Positions 1 through 63,285 of a stretch of 64,000 nucleotides of DNA are shown here, piece by piece. A program made the position numbers and the translations under genes. Source of the DNA: Octopus sinensis (taxonomy: Eukaryota); contig NC_043000.1 of assembly GCF_006345805.1 (NCBI RefSeq), positions 93,000,001 to 93,064,000 of the forward strand. Direction: 5' to 3'. Each line of letters opens with the position of its first letter. The stretch's first letter is position 1. The notes under the pieces were generated by a model, which was given only the letters and a program-made list of their open reading frames with translations, made no database searches and was not told where the DNA came from.

Positions 1-62
1 ATTTCCAATATTTGTAGTATTGAAGGGGTATCATGTGTGTTGGGCTTATTATTTTGGGTAAA

Positions 63-891
63 ATAAAAGTGGCAGAATCGTTAGCGCACTAGACAAAATG
101 CTTAGCAGTATTTCGCCTGTTGCTACATTCTGGGTTCAAATTCTGCCAAGGTCGACTTTACTCTTCATCCTTTCGAGGTTGATAAAATAAGTACCAGTTG
201 AACATTGGGGATTGATGTAATCTCCTTCTAAATTGCTGCCCTTGTGGCAATATTTGAAACCATTATTTGGGGCAAAATAAGGTGATGAACTGGCAGAATT
301 GTTAACAAGCTGGGCAAACTACATAGTAGCATTTCATCCATCTTTATGTTCCGAGTTCAAATGCTACCGAGGTCAACTTTGCCTTTCATCCTTTCAGGGC
401 CAATAAAATAGGTACCATTTGAACATTAGATTTGATATATTGACTTATCCTCTTCCCTGAAAACGCTAGCCTCAAGCAAGAATTTGTAATTATTATTTTG
501 GGTAATGTGAAAGCGGTGAACTGAGAAAATCATTAGCATGCTTAGCGGTATTTCGTGTCTTTACATTCTGAGTTCAAATTTCTGCCTAGGTTAACTTTAC
601 CTTTCATTCTTTCAGGGTCAATAAATTAAGTACCAGTTGCACACTGAAGTAAATTTAATTGACTGGCCCCCTCCCCCAAAATTTCGGTCCTTGTGCCTAG
701 AGTAGAAAAGTATCGCTAGCATGTCAGGCAAAATACTTTGCAGTATTTCGTCTATCTTTATTTTCTAAGTTCAAATTCCACCAAGGTCAACTTGCCTTTC
801 ATCCTTTAGGGGTCGATAAATTAAGTACCAGTTGCGTACTGGGGTCGATCTAAGTGACTGGCTCCCTCCCACCGAATTTCAGGCCTTGTGC
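63..891 (+). mobile_element. Head-to-tail array of four tRNA-derived SINE family B copies (~63-268, 281-495, 512-712, 713-891; last copy interrupted)
   Basis: Each copy has TGGCAGAATCGTTAGC, TTCTGAGTTCAAAT, CTTTCATCCTTTCGGGGTCGATAAA and AAGTACCAGTT motifs; several junctions carry TTATTTTGGG. Confidence 0.9.
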
Positions 892-1096
892 TAAATTTGA
901 AAAACCAGAGAGGACGGTAAATGGTAAAATCCGAGTTACAGTCAAAGTTGCTGGTAAAGGTGTTTATAATGGTGTTGGACGGAATTATCGCATTGCAAAG
1001 AGTGCTGCTGCCAAAAAAGCTTTGAGAATCCTTAAAACTATGCAGTCTCAGGGCTTCATTGCTCAACTGTCAAATGAAAGGATGATGCAAGGATAA
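890..1096 (+). pseudogene. DICER1: Dicer-1 C-terminal dsRBD and stop codon; probable 5'-truncated processed retrocopy
   Basis: [49 protein letters not shown] aligns by eye with the human Dicer C-terminus [49 protein letters not shown] (recalled); frame intact to TAA at 1094-1096. Identity is high confidence; pseudogene status is inferred from the split SINE. Confidence 0.85.
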
Positions 1097-1402
1097 CCTG
1101 AATAGATTGCTAATCAAGGTACATCTGTGATTCCATAATCAGCCATGCGTATCACGGCATGGCTGCAGATCATTGTTTCAACTACTTGGCACTGAGTGTA
1201 TGTGTATATATTTGCTTAATTTGTGTGTGTGTGTGGTGGAGAGTTTGGGTGCATGAGAGAGAGAGAGAGAAACAAAGTTTAATTTGTATGTAAGAAGTAA
1301 TCAAGGTTTAATGTCAGATAATGAGTAGTAAGTGTGTTTATGATATAATAATTATTTTTAATTTATGAGTGAATCTTTGCATTTTTCTGGGTAATGACAT
1401 GG

Positions 1403-1514
1403 GACGTTGGTAATGATCATGCTCGAGTGGTGCCCTTTTACGTGCCACAGGTACTGGCTTCCGTACCTATGGCATGTAAAAGGGCGCCATTCGAGCGTGA
1501 TCATTACCAACGTC
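1403..1514. repeat. 52-bp inverted repeat with 8-nt loop
   Basis: 1403-1454 pairs with 1463-1514: 47 Watson-Crick, 4 G:U, 1 C-A mismatch on the + strand. Confidence 0.95.
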
Positions 1515-1782
1515 GCTTCACTGACACCTATGCCGGTGGCACATGTAAAAAGATTCGAGTGAGGTCATTGCCAGTACCGCCTGACTGCCCCCCCCCGTGC
1601 CGGTGGCACGTAAAAAGCACCCATTACACTCTCGGAGTGGTTGGCGTTAGGAAGGGCATCCAGCTGTAGAAACTCTGCCAGATCACGATTGGAGCCTGGT
1701 TCTCCAGCCCTCAGTCAAAATCGTCCAACCCATGCTAGCATGGAAAGCGGACTTTAAATGATGATGATGATGATGATGATGA
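1403..1782 (+). mobile_element. SINE-like family F element with (GAT)n tail and 5' fold-back
   Basis: GGCACGTAAAAAGCACC...GGAAGGGCATCCAGCTGTAGAAAC...CCATGCTAGCATGGAAAGCGG then (GAT)n; same organisation at 53505-53810 and 45620-45995. Confidence 0.85.
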
Positions 1783-1783
1783 T

Positions 1784-1892
1784 GTGCCTAGAGTAGAATG
1801 GATTATTTTGGGTAAGGTGGCAAGCTGGCAGAATTGTTAGCCTGCCAGGATAAATGCTTAACGGTATTTCGACCATCCTTACATTCTGAGTT
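1784..1892 (+). mobile_element. Displaced 3' tail of the interrupted family B SINE (1784-1806) plus head fragment of another copy
   Basis: GTGCCTAGAGTAGAA matches the tail of the copy at 693-707; then GGTGGCAAGCTGGCAGAATTGTTAGC. Confidence 0.8.
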
Positions 1893-2039
1893 AAATCCAG
1901 TTAGATCAGATATCCTTTATGTAAATCCATGATCAGAAAGGATGGTTAGGTAAAACATCATGGTGAGAGAGAAGAAAAGAATGATTATGCAGTACATTCT
2001 CAGCTCATTACCTTTCAGTGCCTATTAATAAGGGTTTCA

Positions 2040-2225
2040 AAATTTGGCACAAGGCCAGCATTTTTTGCCACAAGTACAGTGTCTAATTTCCTTCAGTTTC
2101 TGGTTACCAAATCCATTCACAAGGTTTTCGTCAACCCATGGCTATAGTAGAACACACTTGCCTAAGGAGCCACACCATGGAACTGAACCCAGAAACATGT
2201 CATTGAGCAGTGAACTTCCTAGTCT
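2040..2225 (-). mobile_element. SINE family A, 5' half
   Basis: TCAGTTTC..ACCAAATCCATTCACAAGG..CTATAGTAGAACACACTTGCC. Confidence 0.75.
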
Positions 2226-2280
2226 TACAATGAAACCTGTGCTTTATTTTCAATTCAAATACAGGTGACAAGATATTTTT

Positions 2281-2672
2281 TTCTACACTAGGCACAAGGA
2301 CCAAAATTTCGGGGGAGGGGGCTAATCAATTAGATCGACCCCAGTATGCAACTGGTACTTAATCTATCAACCCCGAAAGGATGAAAGGCAAAGTTGACCT
2401 TGGTGGAATTTGAACTCAGAACATAAAGACAGACAAAATACCTATTTCTTTACTACCCACAAGGGGTTAAACACAGTGAGGACAAACAAGGACAGACAAA
2501 CAGATTAAGTCGATTTTATCAACCCCAGTGCGTAACTGGTACTTATTTAATCGACCCCGAAAGGATGAAAGGCAAAGTTGACCTTGGTAGAATTTGAACT
2601 CAGAATGTAGTGACAGAAGAAATACCGCTAAGCATTTCACCTGGCATATTAATGTTTCTGCCAGCTTGACAC
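2281..2672 (-). mobile_element. SINE family B dimer with target-site duplication
   Basis: Two bodies in tandem flanked by ACAGG(T/C)GACAAGATATT. Confidence 0.85.
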
Positions 2673-2829
2673 CTCACAGGCGACAAGATATTAAAACAGC
2701 TATTATCATATATACCGTATGAAATATTTAAACTCCAATTAAACTCAAACTTTCAAGTTATCCTCAACAGATGATTGCTTCTACCCACAAAACTGAAAAA
2801 AAGAAACAGTAGACTATTCGAACAAATAC

Positions 2830-2952
2830 ATACTTACATATATGATATATATGCATGTATGCATGTATGTATGTATGTATGTATGTAAGTATGTATGTAT
2901 GTATGCAAGCATGTATGTATGTATGCTTATGTATGTATATGTATGTATATAT

Positions 2953-3015
<63 letters not shown>

Positions 3016-9334: not shown

Positions 9335-9840
9335 TTATTAAGAAGACCTGGCAAGTAAAGTGAGATCACAGCTGTAGCCTTTACCAGTGTCGCATAACCA
9401 GCCCATTTAAAATGTACCTTTGAATCGACAGGTGATATGCCATGCTTGAGGAGACTTATTAAGTCAAGTAAAATCAAAAATCAAAATCAAAATCACTATC
9501 AGAATCACAATCAAATGGAAATTGTAGTTGTGGATGACCACCTGACCAGCTCCCATGCTGGTGGCATGCAATAAGCACCATTCATGCATGGATTGACGCC
9601 AGTGCCACCTGATTGGCTCCCCATGCTGGTGGAACATAAAAAGCACTGTCCGAAAGTGGTCAAACTAGCCCTGCCAGCCCCAACCGATTCCTGTGCTGGT
9701 GGCTCATAAAAAACACCATCTGAGTATGGCTGATGCCAGTGCTGCCTGACTGGCTCCTGTGCCAGTGGAATGCAAAAAGCTCCGACTACACCCTCTGAGT
9801 GGTTGGTGTTAGGAAGGACATCCAGCTGTAGAAACCTTGC
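9335..9840 (+). mobile_element. Family F element, long form with internal tandem units
   Basis: Repeated CTGACTGGCTCC..GGTGG..AAAAAGCAC units, then GAGTGGTTGGTGTTAGGAAGGACATCCAGCTGTAGAAAC. Confidence 0.75.
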
Positions 9841-16149: not shown

Positions 16150-16490
16150 CATGCTAGGGTCACATGAAAAGCACCCATACTAGTGCCACATAAAAAAAAA
16201 ACACTCATGCTAGTGCCATGTAATAAGCACTCATTGCAGTGCCATGTAGAAAAAGGTATTGTGCTGGCTCCATGTAAAATGCATGCATGCTCATGTAATA
16301 TAAAATGCAGCCATACCAGTGCCATGTAACAAGCAGCCGACATACTCTGTGAAGTGGTTGGTATTAGGAAGGGCATCCAGCCTTAGAAACCATGCCAAAA
16401 CAGATAAATAGAGCCTGGGCACCTCTCCAGCTGGTCAGCTCCAGTAAAACTGTCCACCATGGAGAACAGGCATTAAAAGATGGCAATAAC

Positions 16491-16521
<31 letters not shown>

Positions 16522-17449: not shown

Positions 17450-17950
17450 TAAAGCCTGATGACGTTAACCTTATGACAAGTGACCAAGAATTTTAGCAGG
17501 CAATTTGCTGTGCTTGAGAAGACACATCAATCTAATTAAAATTGTAGTCATGGCCAGTGCTGATGGCATATAAAATACAATCATAGCAATGACAAAAGAC
17601 ATCCAATGCACTTTGTAGAGTGTTTGGCATTAGGGAGGGCATCCAGCTGTAGAAATGTAGCCCAAACAGATGACTGGAGCATGGTGCTGCTCTCTGGCTT
17701 ACCAGCTCTGGTTAAACCTATTTCTTTACTATCCACAAGGGGCTAAACACAGAGAGGACAAGCAAGGACAGACAAACGGATTAAGTCAATTACATCGACC
17801 CTAGTGCATAACTGGTACTTATTTAATTGACCCCGAAAGGATGAAAGGCAAAGTCGACCACAGCGGAATTTGAACTCAGAACGTAGCGGCAGACAAAATA
17901 CCACTAAGCATTTCGTCCAGCATGCTAACGATTCTGCCAGCTCGCCGCCA
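17450..17950. mobile_element. Family F fragment (+, 17450-17715) followed by family B SINE (-, 17718-17950)
   Basis: GGAGGGCATCCAGCTGTAGAAA; GAATTTGAACTCAGAACGTAGCGGCAGAC. Confidence 0.8.
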
Positions 17951-26710: not shown

Positions 26711-26790
26711 GTCATCATCATCATCATCATTGTTCGACCGTGGTCGAGACAATGGAATTTACCATGCTACGCCAGACTTCACGGTCCATC
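26711..26790 (-). mobile_element. RTE LINE extreme 3' end with (TGA)n tail
   Basis: Minus strand DREVWRSMVNSIVSTTVEQ* then TGATGATG. Confidence 0.7.
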
Positions 26791-33519: not shown

Positions 33520-34005
33520 TAATAATAATAATGATAATAATGAATATAAGTTTTAAATATATATATATATTGTGGTTGGATTTACTTAAAGCTATTAATG
33601 AAGAAGTGAAATTCCATTTTAAAATAAGTGTGTTTTAAGGTAAGAAATGTTAGAACTCAGCAGATTATAGAAGCTGATAAGGAATATATGGGTTTGCAAG
33701 AAGAATATCTAACTTTGAAACACTGGATGAATTCAAAGGGAGTACCAAAAAATTGGAATGTAAAATTTTTAAAAAATCAAAGAATTTTAACAAAAATATA
33801 CGCGATGATGATGGTGGTGGTGATGATGGTGGTGATGGTGGTGATGACGATGATGGTGATGAGGCAGAAGTGGAAGGGGCGAAGTGATGACAATGAAGCT
33901 GCCACCCCCACGACCCCCACCACTAACAACAACAAAGGTGACAAGGACAATGATGATGACTATGGTGATGATGATGATGATGATGATGATGACGATGATG
34001 GTGAC

Positions 34006-34043
<38 letters not shown>

Positions 34044-45520: not shown

Positions 45521-45619
45521 TAAATGATTAGATACAGAAGAGACACATCAGGTCATCCCATAAGTTCTGTCTTTTTAAAAATTGAATGAAATTTAATAGT
45601 ATTTCAGAATGTCTAATCA

Positions 45620-45995
45620 TCATCACCATCGATTAACGTCTGCTTTCCATGCTAGCATGGGTTGGACGATTTGACGGAGGACTGGCGAACCAGATGGCTG
45701 CACCAGGCTTCAATCTGATCTGGCAGAGTTTCTACAGGTAGATGCCCTTCCTAACGCCAACCACTCTGGGAGTGTAGTGGGTGCTTTTACGTGGTACCAG
45801 CACGAGGGCCAGTCTGGCGGTAGTGGCAACGGCCACACTCGAAATGGTAATTTTTACATGCCACCTGCACAGAAGTCAATCCAGCGCCACTGGCAATGAC
45901 CTCGCTCGAATGTTTTGTTCATGTGCCACCAGCACATGCGCCAGTAAGGCAACTCTCGTAATGATCATGCTCAAATGGAGCTTTTTATGTGCCAT
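45620..45995 (-). mobile_element. Family F element
   Basis: CATC(ATC)..TTTCCATGCTAGCATGG..GATGCCCTTCCTAACGCC. Confidence 0.85.
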
Positions 45996-46842: not shown

Positions 46843-47039
46843 TATACACATAGACACATACACACAGTCACATGCATTCTCTATTTTCTCTGCCTCTTCC
46901 AAACACATGCACCCATCTGTAAATATGCTTGTAAGTGTCAAGACACTGTTCATTAAGAGTGTATGTGCATGTTCATATGTGTATATATACATAGATACAT
47001 ACATGGACAATGAACTTTCAATTATGATGATGATGATGA

Positions 47040-47096
47040 TGATGATATATACATACATATATATATAATATATATATATATATTATATATATATAC

Positions 47097-48950: not shown

Positions 48951-49564
48951 CTTTATGAGAAGGATTGCATCATAGATGTGTTCACATATATTGTAAATAA
49001 TGCATACTTTTTATCTCATTTTCCCTCTCCTCTCCCTTTCTTCTTCACATCTTTTAAGTACTCCCACACACACACCACCACCACCACCATTACACTCTAA
49101 ATTGTAAAGTGTCCTTGTAATAACTGCTTCATCTGATGCTACAAAGATTTGCTCCCAGCAAATGAATCACCATCATCATCATCATCATCATTATATTTGA
49201 CTCTTATTGTGTATAGACATCTTTCTGATTTTCATATACACATACACACACATGCACATAAACACGCACATACAGACACACATATATAAAATTTTATATT
49301 ATTATCTGTAATAAAGAGTGGTAAGGTTCGACAATTGTTTGAGAATCATAAAAAATTCCATTCAGTTTTTCTTCTAACCCTTCCAATTTTGCGTTTGATT
49401 TTCATTCAAGCTAACCTTGCTTTCATCTCTTCAAGTTCAATAGAATAAAGTACCAGTTACTGAATAATACCCACCTTGCGAAAACATTGCTCATCCTATC
49501 CCTGAAGTAGAAACTATTATTCTTTAAAATTAGTATTTTTAGTTATTTTTTTTTTAATGCTACA

Positions 49565-51474: not shown

Positions 51475-51584
51475 ATGATGATGATGACGACAACGACAAT
51501 GATGATGGCAATGACAGTGATGACGATGATGATAATGATGATGATGACAATGATGATGATGATGATGTGATGATGATGATGATG

Positions 51585-51616
<32 letters not shown>

Positions 51617-52060
51617 GGGATGTTAGTTAACGATTACAATGATGCTGACAACAACGATGACAATGATGATCAAATAAGAGGAAGCCGAGGAGGAGGAGAA
51701 GGAGGAGGAAGGAAGGGGAGTAGTAGGAGGATGTTAATTCTTTGAAATACATGTTAGTTATTTATGAATATACACATGCATGTATACAAATGCCCATAAA
51801 TACCCATACCCATACGTGTGTGTGTGTGTGTGTGTGTATACATACATGTATGGATGTATGCATGCATACCATGCATATATACACACACATGTATATATAT
51901 GTACATACATACATACATACATACAGATAAATAGATAGATAGATATACATACATATACATATTTATTAGCTGTACATATAAATAACTATATTTACAGAAA
52001 TGCAAGCAGAAATATGTATGGGTATGGGTGTGTGTGTGTGTGTGTGTGTTTGTGTGTTGG
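51475..52060. repeat. (GAT)n, (GAG)n, (TG)n and (CATA)n tracts
   Basis: Direct inspection. Confidence 0.9.
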
Positions 52061-53504: not shown

Positions 53505-53810
53505 GGAAGGTCATTGCCAGAGCCGCTGGACTGGCTCCTGTACAGGTGGCACATAAAAAGCACCATTTGAGCATGGCCGCTGCCAGTACCGCCTGACTGG
53601 CCCTCATGCTGGTGGTACGTAAAAGCACCCACTACACTCTCGGAGTGGTTGGTGTTAGGAAGGGCATCCAGCTGTAGAAACTCTGCCTGATCAGATTGGA
53701 GTCTGGTGCAGCCATCTGGTTCGCCAGACCTCAGTCAAATCATCCAGCCCATGCTAGCATGGAAAGCAGACGTTAAACGATGATGATGATGATGATGATG
53801 ATGATGATAT
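53505..53810 (+). mobile_element. Family F element with (GAT)n tail
   Basis: Near-identical to 1515-1782. Confidence 0.9.
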
Positions 53811-56016: not shown

Positions 56017-57090
56017 TTGTTGTATTTGGGGATGGTCATGTTGAAAACACACATGCTATATATTTGGTGTTCACTTGCTTCAGCTTTATTTTATATTGAT
56101 TTTATTTCGGCCAGAGTTCTTTCATCAGACTTCTGTGACCTCATCAGTAGTCCTTTGCTTTCTTCTTTCTTTTTTGTGTCTCTCCTTACTAATGATCTGC
56201 CATTTTTATTCCTGTAGCATGTGTCTTTATTTGCACATGCATATATCCCTGTGTGTCTTTATTTGCACATGTGTATATCCCTGTAAGTGTCTATGTTTAG
56301 TAAGTGTGTGTGTGTGGGAATCTGTATGGTACATGCATTATCAATATTCCCTGTTTATTCACTTTCGTTTGATTTACTTTTATTTTATTCATTTATTTTT
56401 AGCTACTTACTTTTCATTTCTTTCTTTTTTGTATTAATTTAATTTAATTTAATTTGTTAATGTATATAGTTATTTAATTCCATTTATTTATCTGTGTATT
56501 GTATTAGTTTCATATTATTATCAGTTTCTGTAGATCTTATTCTGTCATAGGTTGTGGTGTGTAGGGGATGTGTGTTAGTGTTCCATTCTTGTTTTCTATT
56601 TAGGCTAGATTTATTTTCTATTATGTATGTAGCTTCGGTAATTTGTCTAAGCGTTGTGTCTGTTCTATGTATAGACAAGATTTTAACTTCTATATTGTTT
56701 AGTGAGCCTCTGTGTTCCCACTCAGCATGCTGGTATAGAACTGATGTGCTCTTCTCTTCCTTAAGTTCCCTCCAATACTCATTTACCCGCTCTCCTATGC
56801 TCCATGCTGTCTCCCCTTTGTACATTGTTGTCTTGTTTCTGCACCATCCCTCTGTACATCTTATACTATACACTACATTCCTAACTTTACAGTTTGTTTG
56901 TGGGCTAAATCTACATACAATACAGTTCCTATCAGTACAGAAGGTACTACCAAAAGGTACTAATAGGAACTGTATTGTATGTCAAGTCCTTCCCTGTGGA
57001 CTGCGTGTTGTACCACTGCAGAACTACTGCACATACAGATAGTTCACACCGGCCCTTCCCTGAGAAAAGCTCTGTCCAAGAACAACACCT
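56017..57090 (-). mobile_element. Penelope-like element 3' part (GIY-YIG endonuclease + 3' terminus)
   Basis: CTDRNCIVC..CKVRNVVYSIRC..YKGETAWSIGERVNEY..LRQITEATYI..LNRKQEW. Confidence 0.85.
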
Positions 57091-58294: not shown

Positions 58295-59759
58295 AGTAAT
58301 ACTGTACACTTTGGATAACTTATTTTATGCTAAGCTATCAAAGGCAGACGTTCAAATCATTTAAAGTGATCTAAAGTAAAATTCTCCATCAAATATTTCC
58401 TGCTTAATAATGACAAAATTCCTTTACTTAAATTCTTGATAATACAAAGAATTAATTGAAACGAAACCGTGTATTTCAGCAGAAATATGATAACAAAAGT
58501 GTTAAATCATTTGCTTCACACCTTGTGATGAATAAAGACATGATTTACCAATTTGCTACACTGTCTTCCATTGGATATCATTTTAAATATATTCCATGCA
58601 CAGCATGTTGAACAACTGTTCAACACTGTTCAGTGCTCAGGTAATTTCTTTCTTTGAAGAGAAGCCTTAATCTTTGTTGGGTAATATCAGTTACATAATA
58701 CATGTGTTAACTGCAAAAGGTCATCAATTTGTCGAAGTTAAAATATCATAAAGACTTTAAGATGATTTAAACTTGCTTTATATTTGAACATATGTGTCAA
58801 AGTAATGATTTGTTATTGTATCCAAGTTAATTAGGAAACGAAATGCCAGCTGTAGAGGGAATGGTAGACTTTTTTCCTCAGTCTGGTTTGGCATTAACTC
58901 TTTTGATGTCAACCTGCCGAAATTTAATTCTTGTTCTGTAATGTAAACTCTAGTATTTTCAAAGTGATTGCATTTAAATGAAATACTTCCAGTGTATAAA
59001 TACAATGCATGCATGCTACGTGTATGTGTGTGTGTGTGTTTATGTATTTTTGTGCCTCCTTGTTTTGACATTGTAGGCTAGCTGTAAATGAACATCACCT
59101 TCATACATGCAGTGTCATTTGCTTACAATCCTCCATGAAAATATATCTGGTCACAAGGAAACGGGTAAGGGTTGGTGACAGGATGATGCTGATGATGATA
59201 ATGATGATGATGATGATGATGATGATTTCTGTTTCTTATTTTTGACTTTATCTAAACATGGAACTTTCTTGCTAATCATAATCTACAAGTTTATCTATGG
59301 AATCAGGTAATTCTTAAATTTTGGGCTTGAGTGATCAAGAGTCCAAAAGAGAATTAAATCCATTGTCACAGAAATGTATTGTTGCAAATGGAACGAGGAC
59401 GAAATTCTTGGCTTTAATCTCTTATCCATTTTGTTACTGTATTTCTGTTAATATACACAATGGCCTCTGCTTCAATTAATTTCAAAAACAATGAAGAATT
59501 TTGTAGAATAACTTTATCATTAAGCTGTTGTTTAGAACATTAATTAGCATGCAATTTTGAATCAAGCTTCTAATTTGAATAATCTTATTCCTTTTGTTGG
59601 ATGAAATGCACTACATGTGTTTCAATTAATTTTTTTAAATTTGATAACTATGTTATAATTAAACTGGGGTTTCAAACATAAGTTAGCATGAAACTTTGAT
59701 GGAAGATTTTCATTCATATCATTTTAAACAAGTAGTTAGCATTGTAGAATTGAGAGCAG

Positions 59760-59999: not shown

Positions 60000-60235
60000 A
60001 AGCCCAGTGAGGGCAGGTGCCCTACGTTGGTAACTAGTATGCTCTGTGAAATTGTTGGTACTAGGAAGGGCATCTTGCTGTAGAAACCATATCAAAACAG
60101 ACATTAGACTTGGTGCAGCCCTCTAGCTTGTTGCTTCATGTTGAACTACCCAACCTATAGAGGCATGGAAATTGGGATGCTAAATGATGATGATGCTGCT
60201 GCTACTGTTGATGATGATGATGACTATGATGATGT
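60000..60235 (+). mobile_element. Family F fragment with (GAT)n tail
   Basis: GGAAGGGCATCTTGCTGTAGAAAC. Confidence 0.7.
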
Positions 60236-62229: not shown

Positions 62230-63285
62230 CTTGTTCACTGGTCATGCTTCAAGAACCCTGCAAAGAATTCTTGTAATTCCAAGCAAAGCTGATCTTTCTA
62301 TGCGTCCTACTTTCACACTTGCACCAGTCTTTTCCAGCGATGTTGGTACATGAGTGCTGATACTTCCAAGTGCACCAATTACCATTGGTATCATCTCTAC
62401 TCTCCTCATTGACCACAACCTTTGTATTTCCCACTTTAAATCATCATTGTTTATTTTTTCTTCTGTTACATTGATGCTGTTGTCACTGGGACATGCTATG
62501 TCGATGATCATACATGTTCTTTCTTTTTTATTCACCGCAACAATGTCCCATTTCCGATGTCTGGTCAGGTGATTGCACTGGGTCATTGCATCCCACAGGA
62601 TTTTGCAATTCTCATTTTCAGTGACTCTTTCTGGAGTTTGCTCATACCATGTTTTTGCTCTTTGTAGGCCGTGCTTTCCACAGAGCTCCCAATGGATCAT
62701 TCTTGCCACATTGTCATGGCATCTTTTGTATTTGAATTATGCTAATTTCAGGCATTCACTAATGATGTGCTATACCACTTCAACTCTCTCACCACACATT
62801 CTGCATTTGTCGCTATCGGTAGTGTTGTCTATTCCACACTTCATATAATTGTTCCTTAATGCTTGTTCCTGAGCTGTGCATATGAGTGCTTCTGTCTCTA
62901 TCTTCAGGTCACAACCTCCTCATCCATAGCCACCGGTCCTCTGTATCTGTCTTGGTGTTCACATCTCTTGCAAACTGACCGTACATTATCCTTTCATTCC
63001 ATGCTTTTTCTTTTTTTTTTGTTCATTTCTTATTTAAATTTTTCTTTACTCATGCAATTTTCAGTTTTGATGATGCCGGCCTTCTTCGTGTGTTTCAACA
63101 GCGACTCCACAGTATTTTTTATATACCACCCTAAGCCATTTTCCTCTGCTTCGATACAGTCCTGGTAACTGATAAAACCTCTCCCACTCCTTCTTTTGGA
63201 CAAGTACAGTCTATTATTTTTTCAAATTTTCTTCCATTTCTCACCAAGTATTTTCTGTACACCTAGGGCAGAGAAGCTCATTGTA
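62230..63285 (-). mobile_element. Dong/R4-like LINE, 5'-truncated
   Basis: KCRMCGERVE..HIISEC; ARMIHWELCGKHGL; KILWD; CMIIDIACP; IPMVIGALG; SALLGITRILCRVL. Confidence 0.9.

What the first reader, a model, noticed from the sequence alone, without database searches (positions are those of the whole stretch)
856..1806. Dicer-1 3' end appears retrotransposed into the middle of a SINE
Seen: the SINE copy stops at ...AATTTCAGGCCTTGTGC (891). Its missing tail, CTAGAGTAGAA..GATTATT, resumes at 1788-1806, matching the intact tail at 693-707. TGTGC is duplicated (887-891, 1783-1787). The intervening segment holds the Dicer dsRBD, stop codon, ~300 nt of UTR-like sequence and a (GAT)n-tailed element. Established (recalled): human DICER1 has a phase-2 intron inside the codon after AKF, and here AKFE-KPERT runs uninterrupted. 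Inference: reverse transcription primed on the (GAT)n tail, probably by an RTE-type LINE, copied into Dicer mRNA, either by 5' transduction from a SINE in the Dicer 3' UTR or by template switching. The intact frame suggests a young event: a retroelement-made copy of part of the RNAi nuclease gene.
Basis: partly seen in the sequence, partly recalled or inferred. Interest (0 to 1): 0.9.

Follow-up and report, generated by a model that had tools for sequence, protein, structure and literature searches.

The report
Dicer tail fragment retrocopied into SINE
An 896-base piece made of the last 68 codons of a Dicer gene, about 300 bases of trailing sequence and a (GAT)n-tailed repeat was pasted by reverse transcription into another repeat; it is an ordinary dead-on-arrival gene-fragment copy, not a new RNAi gene.

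Summary
An A-type SINE body stops at 891. Its missing tail (CTAGAGTAGAA) resumes at 1788, directly after a pure (ATG)9 run, and TGTGC is present at both junctions. In the 64 kb window this is the only orphan body and the only orphan tail of that subfamily.

The 896-bp insert holds:
- a Dicer C-terminal coding fragment (890/892-1096; Pfam Dicer_dsRBD positions 35-89 of 89, so an incomplete domain);
- 306 bp of sequence that is unique in the window;
- a (GAT)n-tailed SINE whose 5' end carries a 52-nt snap-back inverted repeat.

The coding frame reads AKFE|KPERT across a site where 20 of 27 informative invertebrate Dicer ORFs have a phase-2 intron. There is no AG acceptor at that site. The sequence upstream of AKFE is SINE, not Dicer.

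The best reading is one LINE-type (TPRT) retro-insertion of a spliced, 5'-truncated Dicer transcript attached to the (GAT)n SINE. It formed either because that SINE sits in the Dicer 3' UTR or by template switching. The two routes cannot be told apart without the parent locus, which no available collection contains.

RTE involvement and youth are untested. This is a new example of a known kind (partial processed pseudogene or 5' transduction). Interest is low to moderate.

The parts
708..891 (+). Left part of the target: a 5'-truncated A-type tRNA-like SINE body ending ...AATTTCAGGCCTTGTGC and lacking its tail
   Evidence: Aligns with A-type copies 597-696 (81%) and rc 2292-2391 (87%). Those two copies continue into CTAGAGTAGAA; this one does not.
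887..891 (+). Target-site duplication, copy 1 (TGTGC). GC at 890-891 could equally be the first two bases of the Dicer Ala codon, i.e. 2-nt microhomology.
   Evidence: Direct reading; D15.
892..1096 (+). Dicer coding fragment: (A)[15 protein letters not shown]...SNERMMQG plus stop TAA at 1094-1096. It covers the last 11 nt of the penultimate exon and the whole last coding exon, with no intron between them.
   Evidence: Pfam Dicer_dsRBD E=1.2e-24, profile positions 35-89 of 89. Matches human DICER1 1864-1918. 74-76% identical to Dicer last exons of other invertebrates. 17 of 17 nt identical to the intron-less Dicer CDS in L003 across AKFEKP. Single copy in the window.
1097..1402 (+). 306 bp of unique, AT-rich, 3'-UTR-like sequence with short (TG)n and (GA)n runs. 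It has no poly(A) and no AATAAA before the SINE.
   Evidence: Only microsatellite-level self-hits in the window. Direct reading. That it is Dicer 3' UTR is inferred, not shown.
1403..1454 (+). Inverted copy of 1463-1514: a snap-back (hairpin) 5' end of the (GAT)n element, with an 8-nt loop at 1455-1462
   Evidence: I12 and I1: 52-nt arms, 90% complementary. Absent from the two other long copies of the family.
1463..1757 (+). Body of a (GAT)n-tailed SINE family: roughly 67-nt internal repeats followed by a conserved core ...GTGGTTGGCGTTAGGAAGGGCATCCAGCTGTAGAAAC...
   Evidence: Other copies at 53581-53803 (85.5%), rc 45616-45995 (79%) and 9734-9835 (82%), plus related cores at 16316-16397 and 17618-17655.
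1758..1784 (+). Pure (ATG)9 = (GAT)n tail of the element; the 3' end of the insert
   Evidence: TRF: 9.0 copies, 100% matches. Other copies of the family end in the same microsatellite.
1783..1787 (+). Target-site duplication, copy 2 (TGTGC; TG overlaps the microsatellite)
   Evidence: D15. Other family copies are not followed by TGTGC.
1788..1798 (+). Right part of the target: the orphan A-type SINE tail CTAGAGTAGAA
   Evidence: Exact match to 697-707 and 10 of 11 to rc 2281-2291.
1799..1898 (+). Next SINE unit of the array (leader ATTATTTTGGGTAA plus head GGTGGCAAGCTGGCAGAATTGTTAGC...). It is part of the pre-existing target, not of the insert.
   Evidence: D3, D7 and D9.

Best explanation
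One target-primed reverse transcription event pasted an 896-bp cDNA into the 3' end of an A-type SINE that sits in a head-to-tail SINE array.

Proposed steps:
- The template was a spliced Dicer transcript that carried a (GAT)n-tailed SINE about 306 nt downstream of its stop codon.
- A LINE reverse transcriptase that recognises this SINE's 3' end and microsatellite tail primed on the (GAU)n run at a nick in ...TGTGC^CTAGAG....
- It copied the SINE and ran on through the 3' UTR and the last coding exon.
- It stopped 11 nt into the penultimate exon, where the cDNA end was joined to the target. There is 2-nt GC microhomology at that point, and the local sequence also resembles the SINE tail.

The product is a 5'-truncated partial processed pseudogene. 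It has no promoter, no start codon and only about 60% of the dsRBD, so it is most likely inert.

Shown here: the split SINE, the 3-5 bp duplication, the microsatellite tail at the junction, the Dicer identity of the coding part, and the absence of an intron or acceptor at the conserved site.

Inferred: that 1097-1402 is Dicer 3' UTR, that the SINE resided in that UTR, which LINE did the copying, and the age of the event.

I put retro-insertion of any kind at about 0.8-0.85. The confidence given below is for this specific route, with the SINE resident in the UTR.
For: -: the window holds one orphan A-type body (ends 891) and one orphan A-type tail (starts 1788). They lie on the same strand, in order, with TGTGC at both junctions. 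The two other A-type copies are contiguous across this point.
- the insert ends in a pure (ATG)9 that is the normal tail of a repeated element family. Other copies of that family likewise have no long target duplications.
- 20 of 27 informative homolog ORFs show unrelated residues followed by R or S just before [K/R]PERT.
- in L001 (tttttag|A AAA CCT) and L002 (gtacag|G AAG CCG) this is directly visible as an AG acceptor, phase 2.
- the window reads GCT AAA TTT GA|A AAA CCA with no AG; it is identical over 17 nt to an intron-less Dicer CDS (L003).
- the Pfam alignment of the window ORF starts at profile position 35. Exon-only ORFs of other species start at 38-39. So AKF(E) scores as Dicer sequence.
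- nothing upstream of AKFE is Dicer, which indicates 5' truncation.
- 92 of 256 synonymous codings of AKFEKP resemble the B-type SINE tail as well as the observed sequence does. That resemblance therefore does not argue against a coding origin.
- PMC9115989: an octopus RTE LINE ends in a microsatellite. PMC13282606: several LINE clades and many SINE families are recently active in Octopus vulgaris.
Against: - The parent gene was not seen. It is therefore unknown whether this species' Dicer has the intron (7 of 27 informative homolog ORFs lack it) and whether its 3' UTR carries the SINE.
- Intron absence rests on only about 11 nt.
- Positions 891-906 also resemble the tail of a second SINE subfamily, B-type (p about 0.003 against random window 16-mers).
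- The duplication is short (3-5 bp).
- The window starts only 855 bp upstream, so upstream Dicer exons cannot be excluded.
- The snap-back repeat at the SINE's 5' end would fit a template-jumping reverse transcriptase just as well.
Confidence: 0.55

Rival explanations
1. The same retro-insertion, but the chimera was built during reverse transcription. The RT copied a free (GAT)n SINE RNA to its 5' end, snapped back on its own cDNA for 52 nt, and then jumped to an internal site of a Dicer mRNA 3' UTR. It copied that mRNA up to AKFE before the cDNA was joined to the target. This would be a template-switch chimeric retrocopy.
For: The 52-nt inverted duplication with an 8-nt loop sits exactly at the SINE/UTR boundary and is unique to this copy. 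It shows that at least one template jump happened at that point in some event. No poly(A) or target duplication of an earlier SINE insertion is visible at 1402/1403. GGTAATGA occurs on both sides of the boundary (1391-1398 and 1409-1416), which is possible microhomology.
Against: It needs two successive jumps, the second landing inside an mRNA rather than at its 3' end. The 10% divergence between the arms suggests the hairpin is older than a young insertion, which fits a pre-existing SINE in the UTR better. RT error is an alternative cause of that divergence.
Confidence: 0.25
2. This is the genuine last exon of the functional Dicer gene. The window begins in its last intron, and the SINE-borne acceptor TTTCAG|G at 881-882 (or some other site) is used for splicing.
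For: The reading frame is intact and the Pfam score (87 bits) is as high as for bona fide last exons (72-87 bits). The acceptor at 881/882 has a pyrimidine-rich run and would be in frame with a phase-2 donor (direct reading). No collection searched returned any Dicer closer than 83% identity, so a parent elsewhere is unproven.
Against: There is no AG at the conserved acceptor position. Using 881/882 would insert SINE-encoded PC and duplicate AKFE. It leaves unexplained why the SINE lacks its last 11 nt, and why exactly those 11 nt plus a 5-bp overlap reappear right after the (GAT)n tail 896 bp downstream. TPRT does not give 3'-truncated SINE copies.
Confidence: 0.07
3. The structure is a DNA-level event (segmental or filler-DNA insertion of the Dicer 3' region during break repair) or an assembly chimera, not a retrocopy.
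For: If this species' Dicer lacks the AKFE|K intron, as 7 of 27 informative homolog ORFs do, nothing in the coding part requires an RNA intermediate. Microsatellites and SINE arrays are typical places for mis-joins.
Against: The insert ends precisely in a retroelement's microsatellite tail and is flanked by a short duplication of the target, which is the TPRT signature. Both junctions map to the same position of one SINE, which a mis-join at a repeat would not produce. The 891/892 junction is SINE-to-unique sequence, not repeat-to-repeat.
Confidence: 0.06
4. The SINE at 708-906 is complete and simply has a B-type-like tail (CTAAATTTGAAAAACC, compare CCAAAATTTGAAACC). On this reading AKFE is a chance reading of SINE tail next to a Dicer exon, and the A-type tail at 1788 is an unrelated remnant.
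For: Four B-type copies (240, 49747, 50518, rc 2054) have tails that resemble 891-906. The alignment score is reached by only 51 of 20,000 random window 16-mers. One B-type tail even reads AKF* in the same register.
Against: The body of this copy is A-type at the diagnostic stretch TGACTGGC...TTTC. The match to real Dicer CDS is 17 of 17 (L003), against at most 13 of 17 ungapped to any B-type tail. An exon starting at KPERT would have no acceptor. It requires the orphan tail to start at exactly the same SINE position by chance. Most AT-rich codings of AKFEKP resemble the B-type tail anyway.
Confidence: 0.03

Closest known systems
Processed pseudogenes / retrocopies made in trans by LINE reverse transcriptase (L1 in mammals)
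   Same: Spliced mRNA sequence, 5' truncation, insertion flanked by a target-site duplication, and a 3' end defined by the sequence on which the RT primed.
   Different: The 3' end is not the mRNA's poly(A) but the (GAT)n tail of a SINE lying downstream of the stop codon. Only the last 68 codons are present. The duplication is 3-5 bp rather than the 7-20 bp typical of L1. This comparison is from general knowledge and was not tested here.
5' transduction by non-LTR retroelements (L1 and SVA 5' transductions, e.g. the MAST2-SVA F1 subfamily; recalled from the literature)
   Same: Host-gene sequence lying upstream of a retroelement in a read-through transcript is carried along and ends up 5' of the element in the new copy.
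   Different: Here the carrier is a SINE inside a 3' UTR and the transduced part is the gene's 3' end. There is no evidence that the chimera amplified further; the window holds a single copy.
Internal priming of L1/Alu-type retrotransposition on A-rich or repeat tails inside transcripts (recalled: Srikanta et al. 2009, Gene)
   Same: Reverse transcription starts at an internal repeat tail of a longer RNA, so the copy ends there instead of at the true 3' end.
   Different: The tail is a (GAT)n microsatellite, and the enzyme is presumably a stringent-type LINE rather than L1.
Template-switch chimeric retrocopies (U6-L1 and U6-mRNA chimeras; recalled: Buzdin et al. 2002-2003)
   Same: Two unrelated RNAs are joined in one insertion with a single duplication and a single tail.
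   Different: In the known cases the 5' partner is usually a full-length small RNA. Here it would be an internal fragment of an mRNA, and a snap-back repeat sits at the joint.
Dicer C-terminal dsRBD (Pfam PF20932; human DICER1 structures 5ZAK and 7XW2, mouse 3C4B)
   Same: 53-76% identical sequence over the last two thirds of the domain. It aligns to human residues 1864-1918.
   Different: It lacks profile positions 1-34 (the N-terminal part of the domain) and everything upstream (RNase III, PAZ, helicase). It cannot be a nuclease, and it is unlikely to fold as a dsRBD.

Membership tests
LINE-mediated (TPRT) retrocopy / partial processed pseudogene | Insert flanked by a duplication of the target, with the empty site reconstructible from the flanks | tested here: met
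   TGTGC at 887-891 and 1783-1787. Joining 708-891 to 1788-1798 restores CCTTGTGCCTAGAGTAGAA, as in the two intact A-type copies. The duplication is short (3-5 bp).
LINE-mediated (TPRT) retrocopy / partial processed pseudogene | The 3' end of the insert is a retroelement or poly(A)-type tail abutting the target | tested here: met
   Pure (ATG)9 at 1758-1784 directly before the duplication. It is the same tail as in other copies of the element family.
LINE-mediated (TPRT) retrocopy / partial processed pseudogene | Introns of the parent gene are missing | tested here: inconclusive
   AKFE|KPERT is continuous and there is no AG acceptor. The phase-2 intron at this site is present in 20 of 27 informative homolog ORFs and is seen directly in L001 and L002. 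It is absent in 7, and the parent gene of this species was not available. Only 11 nt of upstream exon are present.
LINE-mediated (TPRT) retrocopy / partial processed pseudogene | A separate, intron-containing parent gene exists elsewhere in the genome | not testable with these tools
   No eukaryotic genome of this species is held in any collection: there was no exact-protein record, the metagenome scan gave one unrelated locus, and the viral-contig scans were empty. No other Dicer piece lies in the 64 kb window.
Dicer dsRBD (Pfam PF20932) | Sequence scores above the curated cut-off of the family model | tested here: met
   87.2 bits against a cut-off of 26, E=1.2e-24. PDB Dicer chains match at E about 4e-15.
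Dicer dsRBD (Pfam PF20932) | Complete domain (all 89 profile positions, including the N-terminal part) | tested here: not met
   Only profile positions 35-89 are matched. The residues before AKFE are SINE-encoded (PPNFRPC).
RTE-clade LINE as the mobilising enzyme | A LINE of the RTE clade shares the 3' end and (GAT)n tail of the SINE at 1463-1784 | not tested
   No LINE with this 3' end is present in the window; all hits are short SINE-like copies. No repeat library was available. The literature says only that the octopus RTE ends in a microsatellite (PMC9115989).
tRNA-derived SINE (the split A-type element) | Recognisable tRNA-related head with A and B boxes | tested here: inconclusive
   ARAGORN finds no tRNA in 1-3000 and Rfam gives no tRNA match. 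A B-box-like GAGTTCAAATTCC is visible by eye. A 17-bp duplication around the copy at 2278-2675 shows that the family moves by retrotransposition (D14).

The most novel reading that the evidence does not exclude
(GAT)n-tailed SINEs lodged in 3' UTRs may serve as handles that let a stringent, microsatellite-tailed LINE copy host mRNAs. That would give this SINE-rich (apparently octopod) genome a general route to gene-fragment retrocopies, and this locus would be one of many. A second possibility is that the fragment is exonised through the in-frame SINE acceptor TTTCAG|G at 881-882, so that some transcript ends in a Dicer-derived dsRNA-binding tail.
Probability: 0.1. Interest if true: 0.55.

Novelty: new member of a known kind. 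Interest (0 to 1): 0.3.

Why it matters
As it stands, this is a tidy textbook-style example of how non-LTR retrotransposition shuffles pieces of host genes. The empty site can be rebuilt from the flanks, the tail marks the priming site, and the snap-back repeat records a template jump.

Its practical value is mostly for annotation. The open, well-scoring Dicer_dsRBD frame could be mis-called as a Dicer gene or a second Dicer paralogue, and it should be flagged as a fragmentary retrocopy.

It would gain interest only in two cases. One is if a genome-wide search showed that SINE-in-UTR priming is a recurrent source of retrocopies in cephalopods. The other is if the fragment proved to be transcribed and spliced.

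Tried and rejected
- Exact-protein look-up of the 80-aa ORF to recover the source contig and 10 kb of upstream sequence: nothing on record.
- Homolog search: 45 Dicer last-exon fragments, best 83% identity. None came from the same or a close species, so there is no parent.
- Contigs of the hits examined (L001, L002) share no repeats with the window. They are not close relatives and served only as intron-position controls.
- Metagenome scan with the peptide: one unrelated AT-rich intron-less Dicer, L003.
- Viral-contig scans for the uninterrupted SINE junction and for the Dicer junction: no hits.
- tblastn of longer Dicer C-termini and RNase III exons against the window: no other Dicer piece on either strand. 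A self-insertion next to the original last exon within 63 kb downstream is therefore not supported.
- I seriously considered that 892-906 is just a B-type SINE tail. I rejected it after subfamily alignment, comparison with real CDS and simulation.
- Rfam and ARAGORN on 1-3000: only sub-threshold microsatellite-driven miRNA-like hits and no tRNA.
- Pfam on eight other long ORFs of the window: no families.
- A possible long duplication for the (GAT)n element (ATTTTTCTGGGTAATGAC at 1381-1398 against ATTATTTTGGGTAAGGTG at 1802-1819, 14 of 18): it is not adjacent to the junction and is near chance level, so I left it unexplained.
- The organism looks like an octopod from my recollection of these SINE sequences. 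No tool confirmed this.
Full report
**What is there**

The first 2 kb of the window is a head-to-tail array of tRNA-like SINE units on the + strand (about 40-285, 285-505, 505-707, 708-891, and 1799-1898). I split the units by their 3' ends into two subfamilies:
- 'A-type': ...AAATTTC(G/A)G(T/G)CCTTGTGCCTAGAGTAGAA(A)n.
- 'B-type': ...AAATTGCTGGCCTTGTGCCAAAATTTGAAACC...

Both types are visible. A minus-strand dimeric copy at 2278-2675 is flanked by a 17-bp direct repeat (2261-2277 and 2676-2692, D14). That repeat fixes the true 3' end of the A-type element at ...CCTAGTGTAGAAAAAA.

**The observation**

The window has three A-type bodies that reach CCTTGTGC, ending at 696, 891 and rc 2292. It has three A-type tails matching GCCTAGAGTAGAA with at most 1 mismatch, at 695, 1786 and rc 2281.
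- In two copies, body and tail are contiguous.
- The third body stops at 891.
- The third tail starts after a pure (ATG)9 (1758-1784) at 1783/1788.
- TGTGC is present at both junctions.

In the alignment, 700-920 and 1740-1830 complement each other exactly against the intact copies. Joining 891 to 1788 restores an intact A-type 3' end.

This is the classical picture of an insertion with a short (3-5 bp) target-site duplication, and chance does not plausibly explain it.
- The tail match ends at 1798. What follows is the leader of the next SINE unit.
- The break is about 11 nt plus an A-run from the SINE's 3' end, not in its middle.
- The Dicer part is not a complete dsRBD.

**The insert (892-1787)**

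It has three parts.

1. Coding fragment, 892-1096, reading (A)[67 protein letters not shown].
   - It hits Pfam Dicer_dsRBD at 87 bits, but only over profile positions 35-89 of 89.
   - It aligns to human DICER1 residues 1864-1918 of 1922.
   - It is up to 83% identical (best hits mostly 73-76%) to Dicer last exons from other invertebrates.
   - Its Pfam score is as good as theirs (72-87 bits), so it shows no decay.
   - It has no in-frame ATG before the fragment, and a stop lies at 851-853.

2. 1097-1402: unique in the window apart from microsatellites. It has no poly(A) and no AATAAA. I take it to be 3' UTR by inference only.

3. 1403-1784: a member of a (GAT)n-tailed SINE family.
   - Other copies lie at 53581-53803, rc 45616-45995 and 9734-9835.
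   - In this copy only, the first 52 nt (1403-1454) are the reverse complement of 1463-1514, with an 8-nt loop between them.
   - That is the footprint of a cDNA that folded back and copied itself.

**The intron argument**

Among the 45 homologs, 27 show residues upstream of [K/R]PERT.
- In 20 of them, those residues are unrelated to Dicer and end in R or S.
- The genomic DNA of L001 (gtttgtttttag|A AAA CCT GAG) and L002 (gttgtacag|G AAG CCG GAG) shows why. The R or S is the AG acceptor plus the first exon base of a phase-2 intron in the codon before K.
- The other 7 read ...[13 protein letters not shown] without interruption.

The window reads GCT AAA TTT GA|A AAA CCA GAG. It has no AG and no pyrimidine tract. 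It has the four residues AKFE expected from the upstream exon, and it is identical over 17 nt to the intron-less Dicer CDS in L003. The Pfam alignment accordingly starts three to four positions earlier than in exon-only ORFs. Upstream of AKFE the sequence is SINE.

So the copy begins 11 nt inside the penultimate exon and lacks the intron. That is what a spliced, 5'-truncated cDNA would give.

Caveat: the intron is not universal, and I could not see the parent gene of this species.

**A complication I raised and resolved**

Positions 891-906 (CTAAATTTGAAAAACC) resemble the B-type SINE tail (CCAAAATTTGAAACC). Only 51 of 20,000 random window 16-mers align as well. If the SINE simply continued with such a tail, AKFE would be an accident. 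I reject this for five reasons:
- The body of this copy is A-type at the diagnostic stretch.
- The match to real Dicer CDS is perfect, whereas the match to B-type tails needs indels.
- The exon would have no acceptor.
- The orphan A-type tail at 1788 would remain unexplained.
- 92 of the 256 synonymous codings of AKFEKP score as high against B-type tails. The resemblance is therefore a property of the conserved peptide's codons in an AT-rich genome, not of this locus. It may even have helped the 5' end join here.

**Mechanism**

The (GAT)n tail at the 3' junction, the short duplication and the 5' truncation point to target-primed reverse transcription by a LINE that recognises this SINE's 3' end.

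Two routes remain for how Dicer sequence came to lie 5' of the SINE.
- (a) The SINE, with its snap-back 5' end, resides in the 3' UTR of the real Dicer gene. The RT primed internally on its (GAU)n run and read on into the mRNA. This would be internal priming, or 5' transduction.
- (b) The RT copied a free SINE RNA, snapped back, and then jumped to a Dicer mRNA. This would be a template-switch chimera.

I favour (a) for two reasons. It needs no jump into the interior of an mRNA. The 10% divergence between the hairpin arms also suggests that the hairpin predates the event. The data here cannot decide between the routes.

The RTE attribution is plausible. An octopus RTE LINE ends in a microsatellite (PMC9115989), and RTE, Dong-R4, CR1 and L1-Tx1 are all recently active in O. 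vulgaris (PMC13282606). It is untested, because no LINE with this 3' end lies in the window.

**Rivals**

- Genuine last exon of the functional gene. This would need the SINE acceptor at 881/882, which is in frame but would insert PC and duplicate AKFE. It leaves the split SINE unexplained. No other Dicer piece lies in the remaining 63 kb. The window starts only 855 bp upstream, so upstream exons cannot be formally excluded.
- DNA-level insertion or misassembly. The retroelement tail plus duplication, and both junctions mapping to one SINE position, make this unlikely.

**Verdict**

This is a real feature, correctly spotted, and in essence correctly interpreted. It is an ordinary kind of thing: a fragmentary, almost certainly inert retrocopy of the last 68 codons of Dicer carried by a SINE.

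Its main practical importance is to avoid annotating it as a Dicer gene. The parent locus, the age, the LINE partner and the choice between routes (a) and (b) all need the whole genome, which none of the available collections contains.

Noticed in passing
window 2261-2692 (minus-strand element 2278-2675): A dimeric SINE is flanked by a 17-bp direct repeat, ACAGG[T/C]GACAAGATATT (2261-2277 and 2676-2692). It consists of one monomer ending ...CCCCTTGTGGGTAGTAAAGAAATAGG fused to a 5'-truncated A-type monomer ending CCTAGTGTAGAAAAAA. The two monomers apparently moved as one unit. The repeat fixes the true 3' end of the A-type SINE.
   Followed up: partly
window 1403-1514: A 52-nt inverted duplication with an 8-nt loop sits at the 5' end of the (GAT)n SINE (90% complementary). 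It is absent from the other two long copies of the family and looks like the footprint of cDNA snap-back. It gives a weak, sub-threshold mir-1-like Rfam hit (21.8 bits against a gathering score of 45.6), which I regard as chance.
   Followed up: partly
window 1381-1398 versus 1802-1819 (also 48-65, 492-509): ATTTTTCTGGGTAATGAC, just upstream of the (GAT)n element, resembles the ATTATTTTGGGTAA leader that precedes several SINE heads in the array (14 of 18). It could be chance, or a hint that the sequence at the UTR/SINE boundary is itself SINE-related. Unexplained.
   Followed up: no
window 1-891: Four SINE units lie head to tail with no unique DNA between them, and the unit at 708 starts inside the A-run of the preceding one. 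Together with the insertion at 891, this suggests SINE 3' ends are preferred targets for further retro-insertions in this genome.
   Followed up: no
window 16488-16521, 33962-34043, 47002-47046, 51518-51623, 59183-59226, 60209-60235; minus strand 26712-26731, 49166-49198: The window has many (GAT)n/(ATC)n arrays. At least one (16316-16521) is attached to a related but distinct SINE core (...GTGGTTGGTATTAGGAAGGGCATCCAGCC...). So several families appear to share this core and tail type.
   Followed up: no
window 56484-56873 (-) and 62242-62709 (-): Two ORFs of 129 and 155 aa look like transposable-element protein remnants by eye, but they have no Pfam match at E<=0.01. Otherwise the 64 kb window shows no convincing cellular gene.
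   Followed up: partly
window 2821-3000: A (TATG)n/(TA)n microsatellite produces a series of miRNA-family Rfam hits (mir-297, mir-3149 and others). All are far below their gathering scores, so they are artefacts of low complexity.
   Followed up: yes
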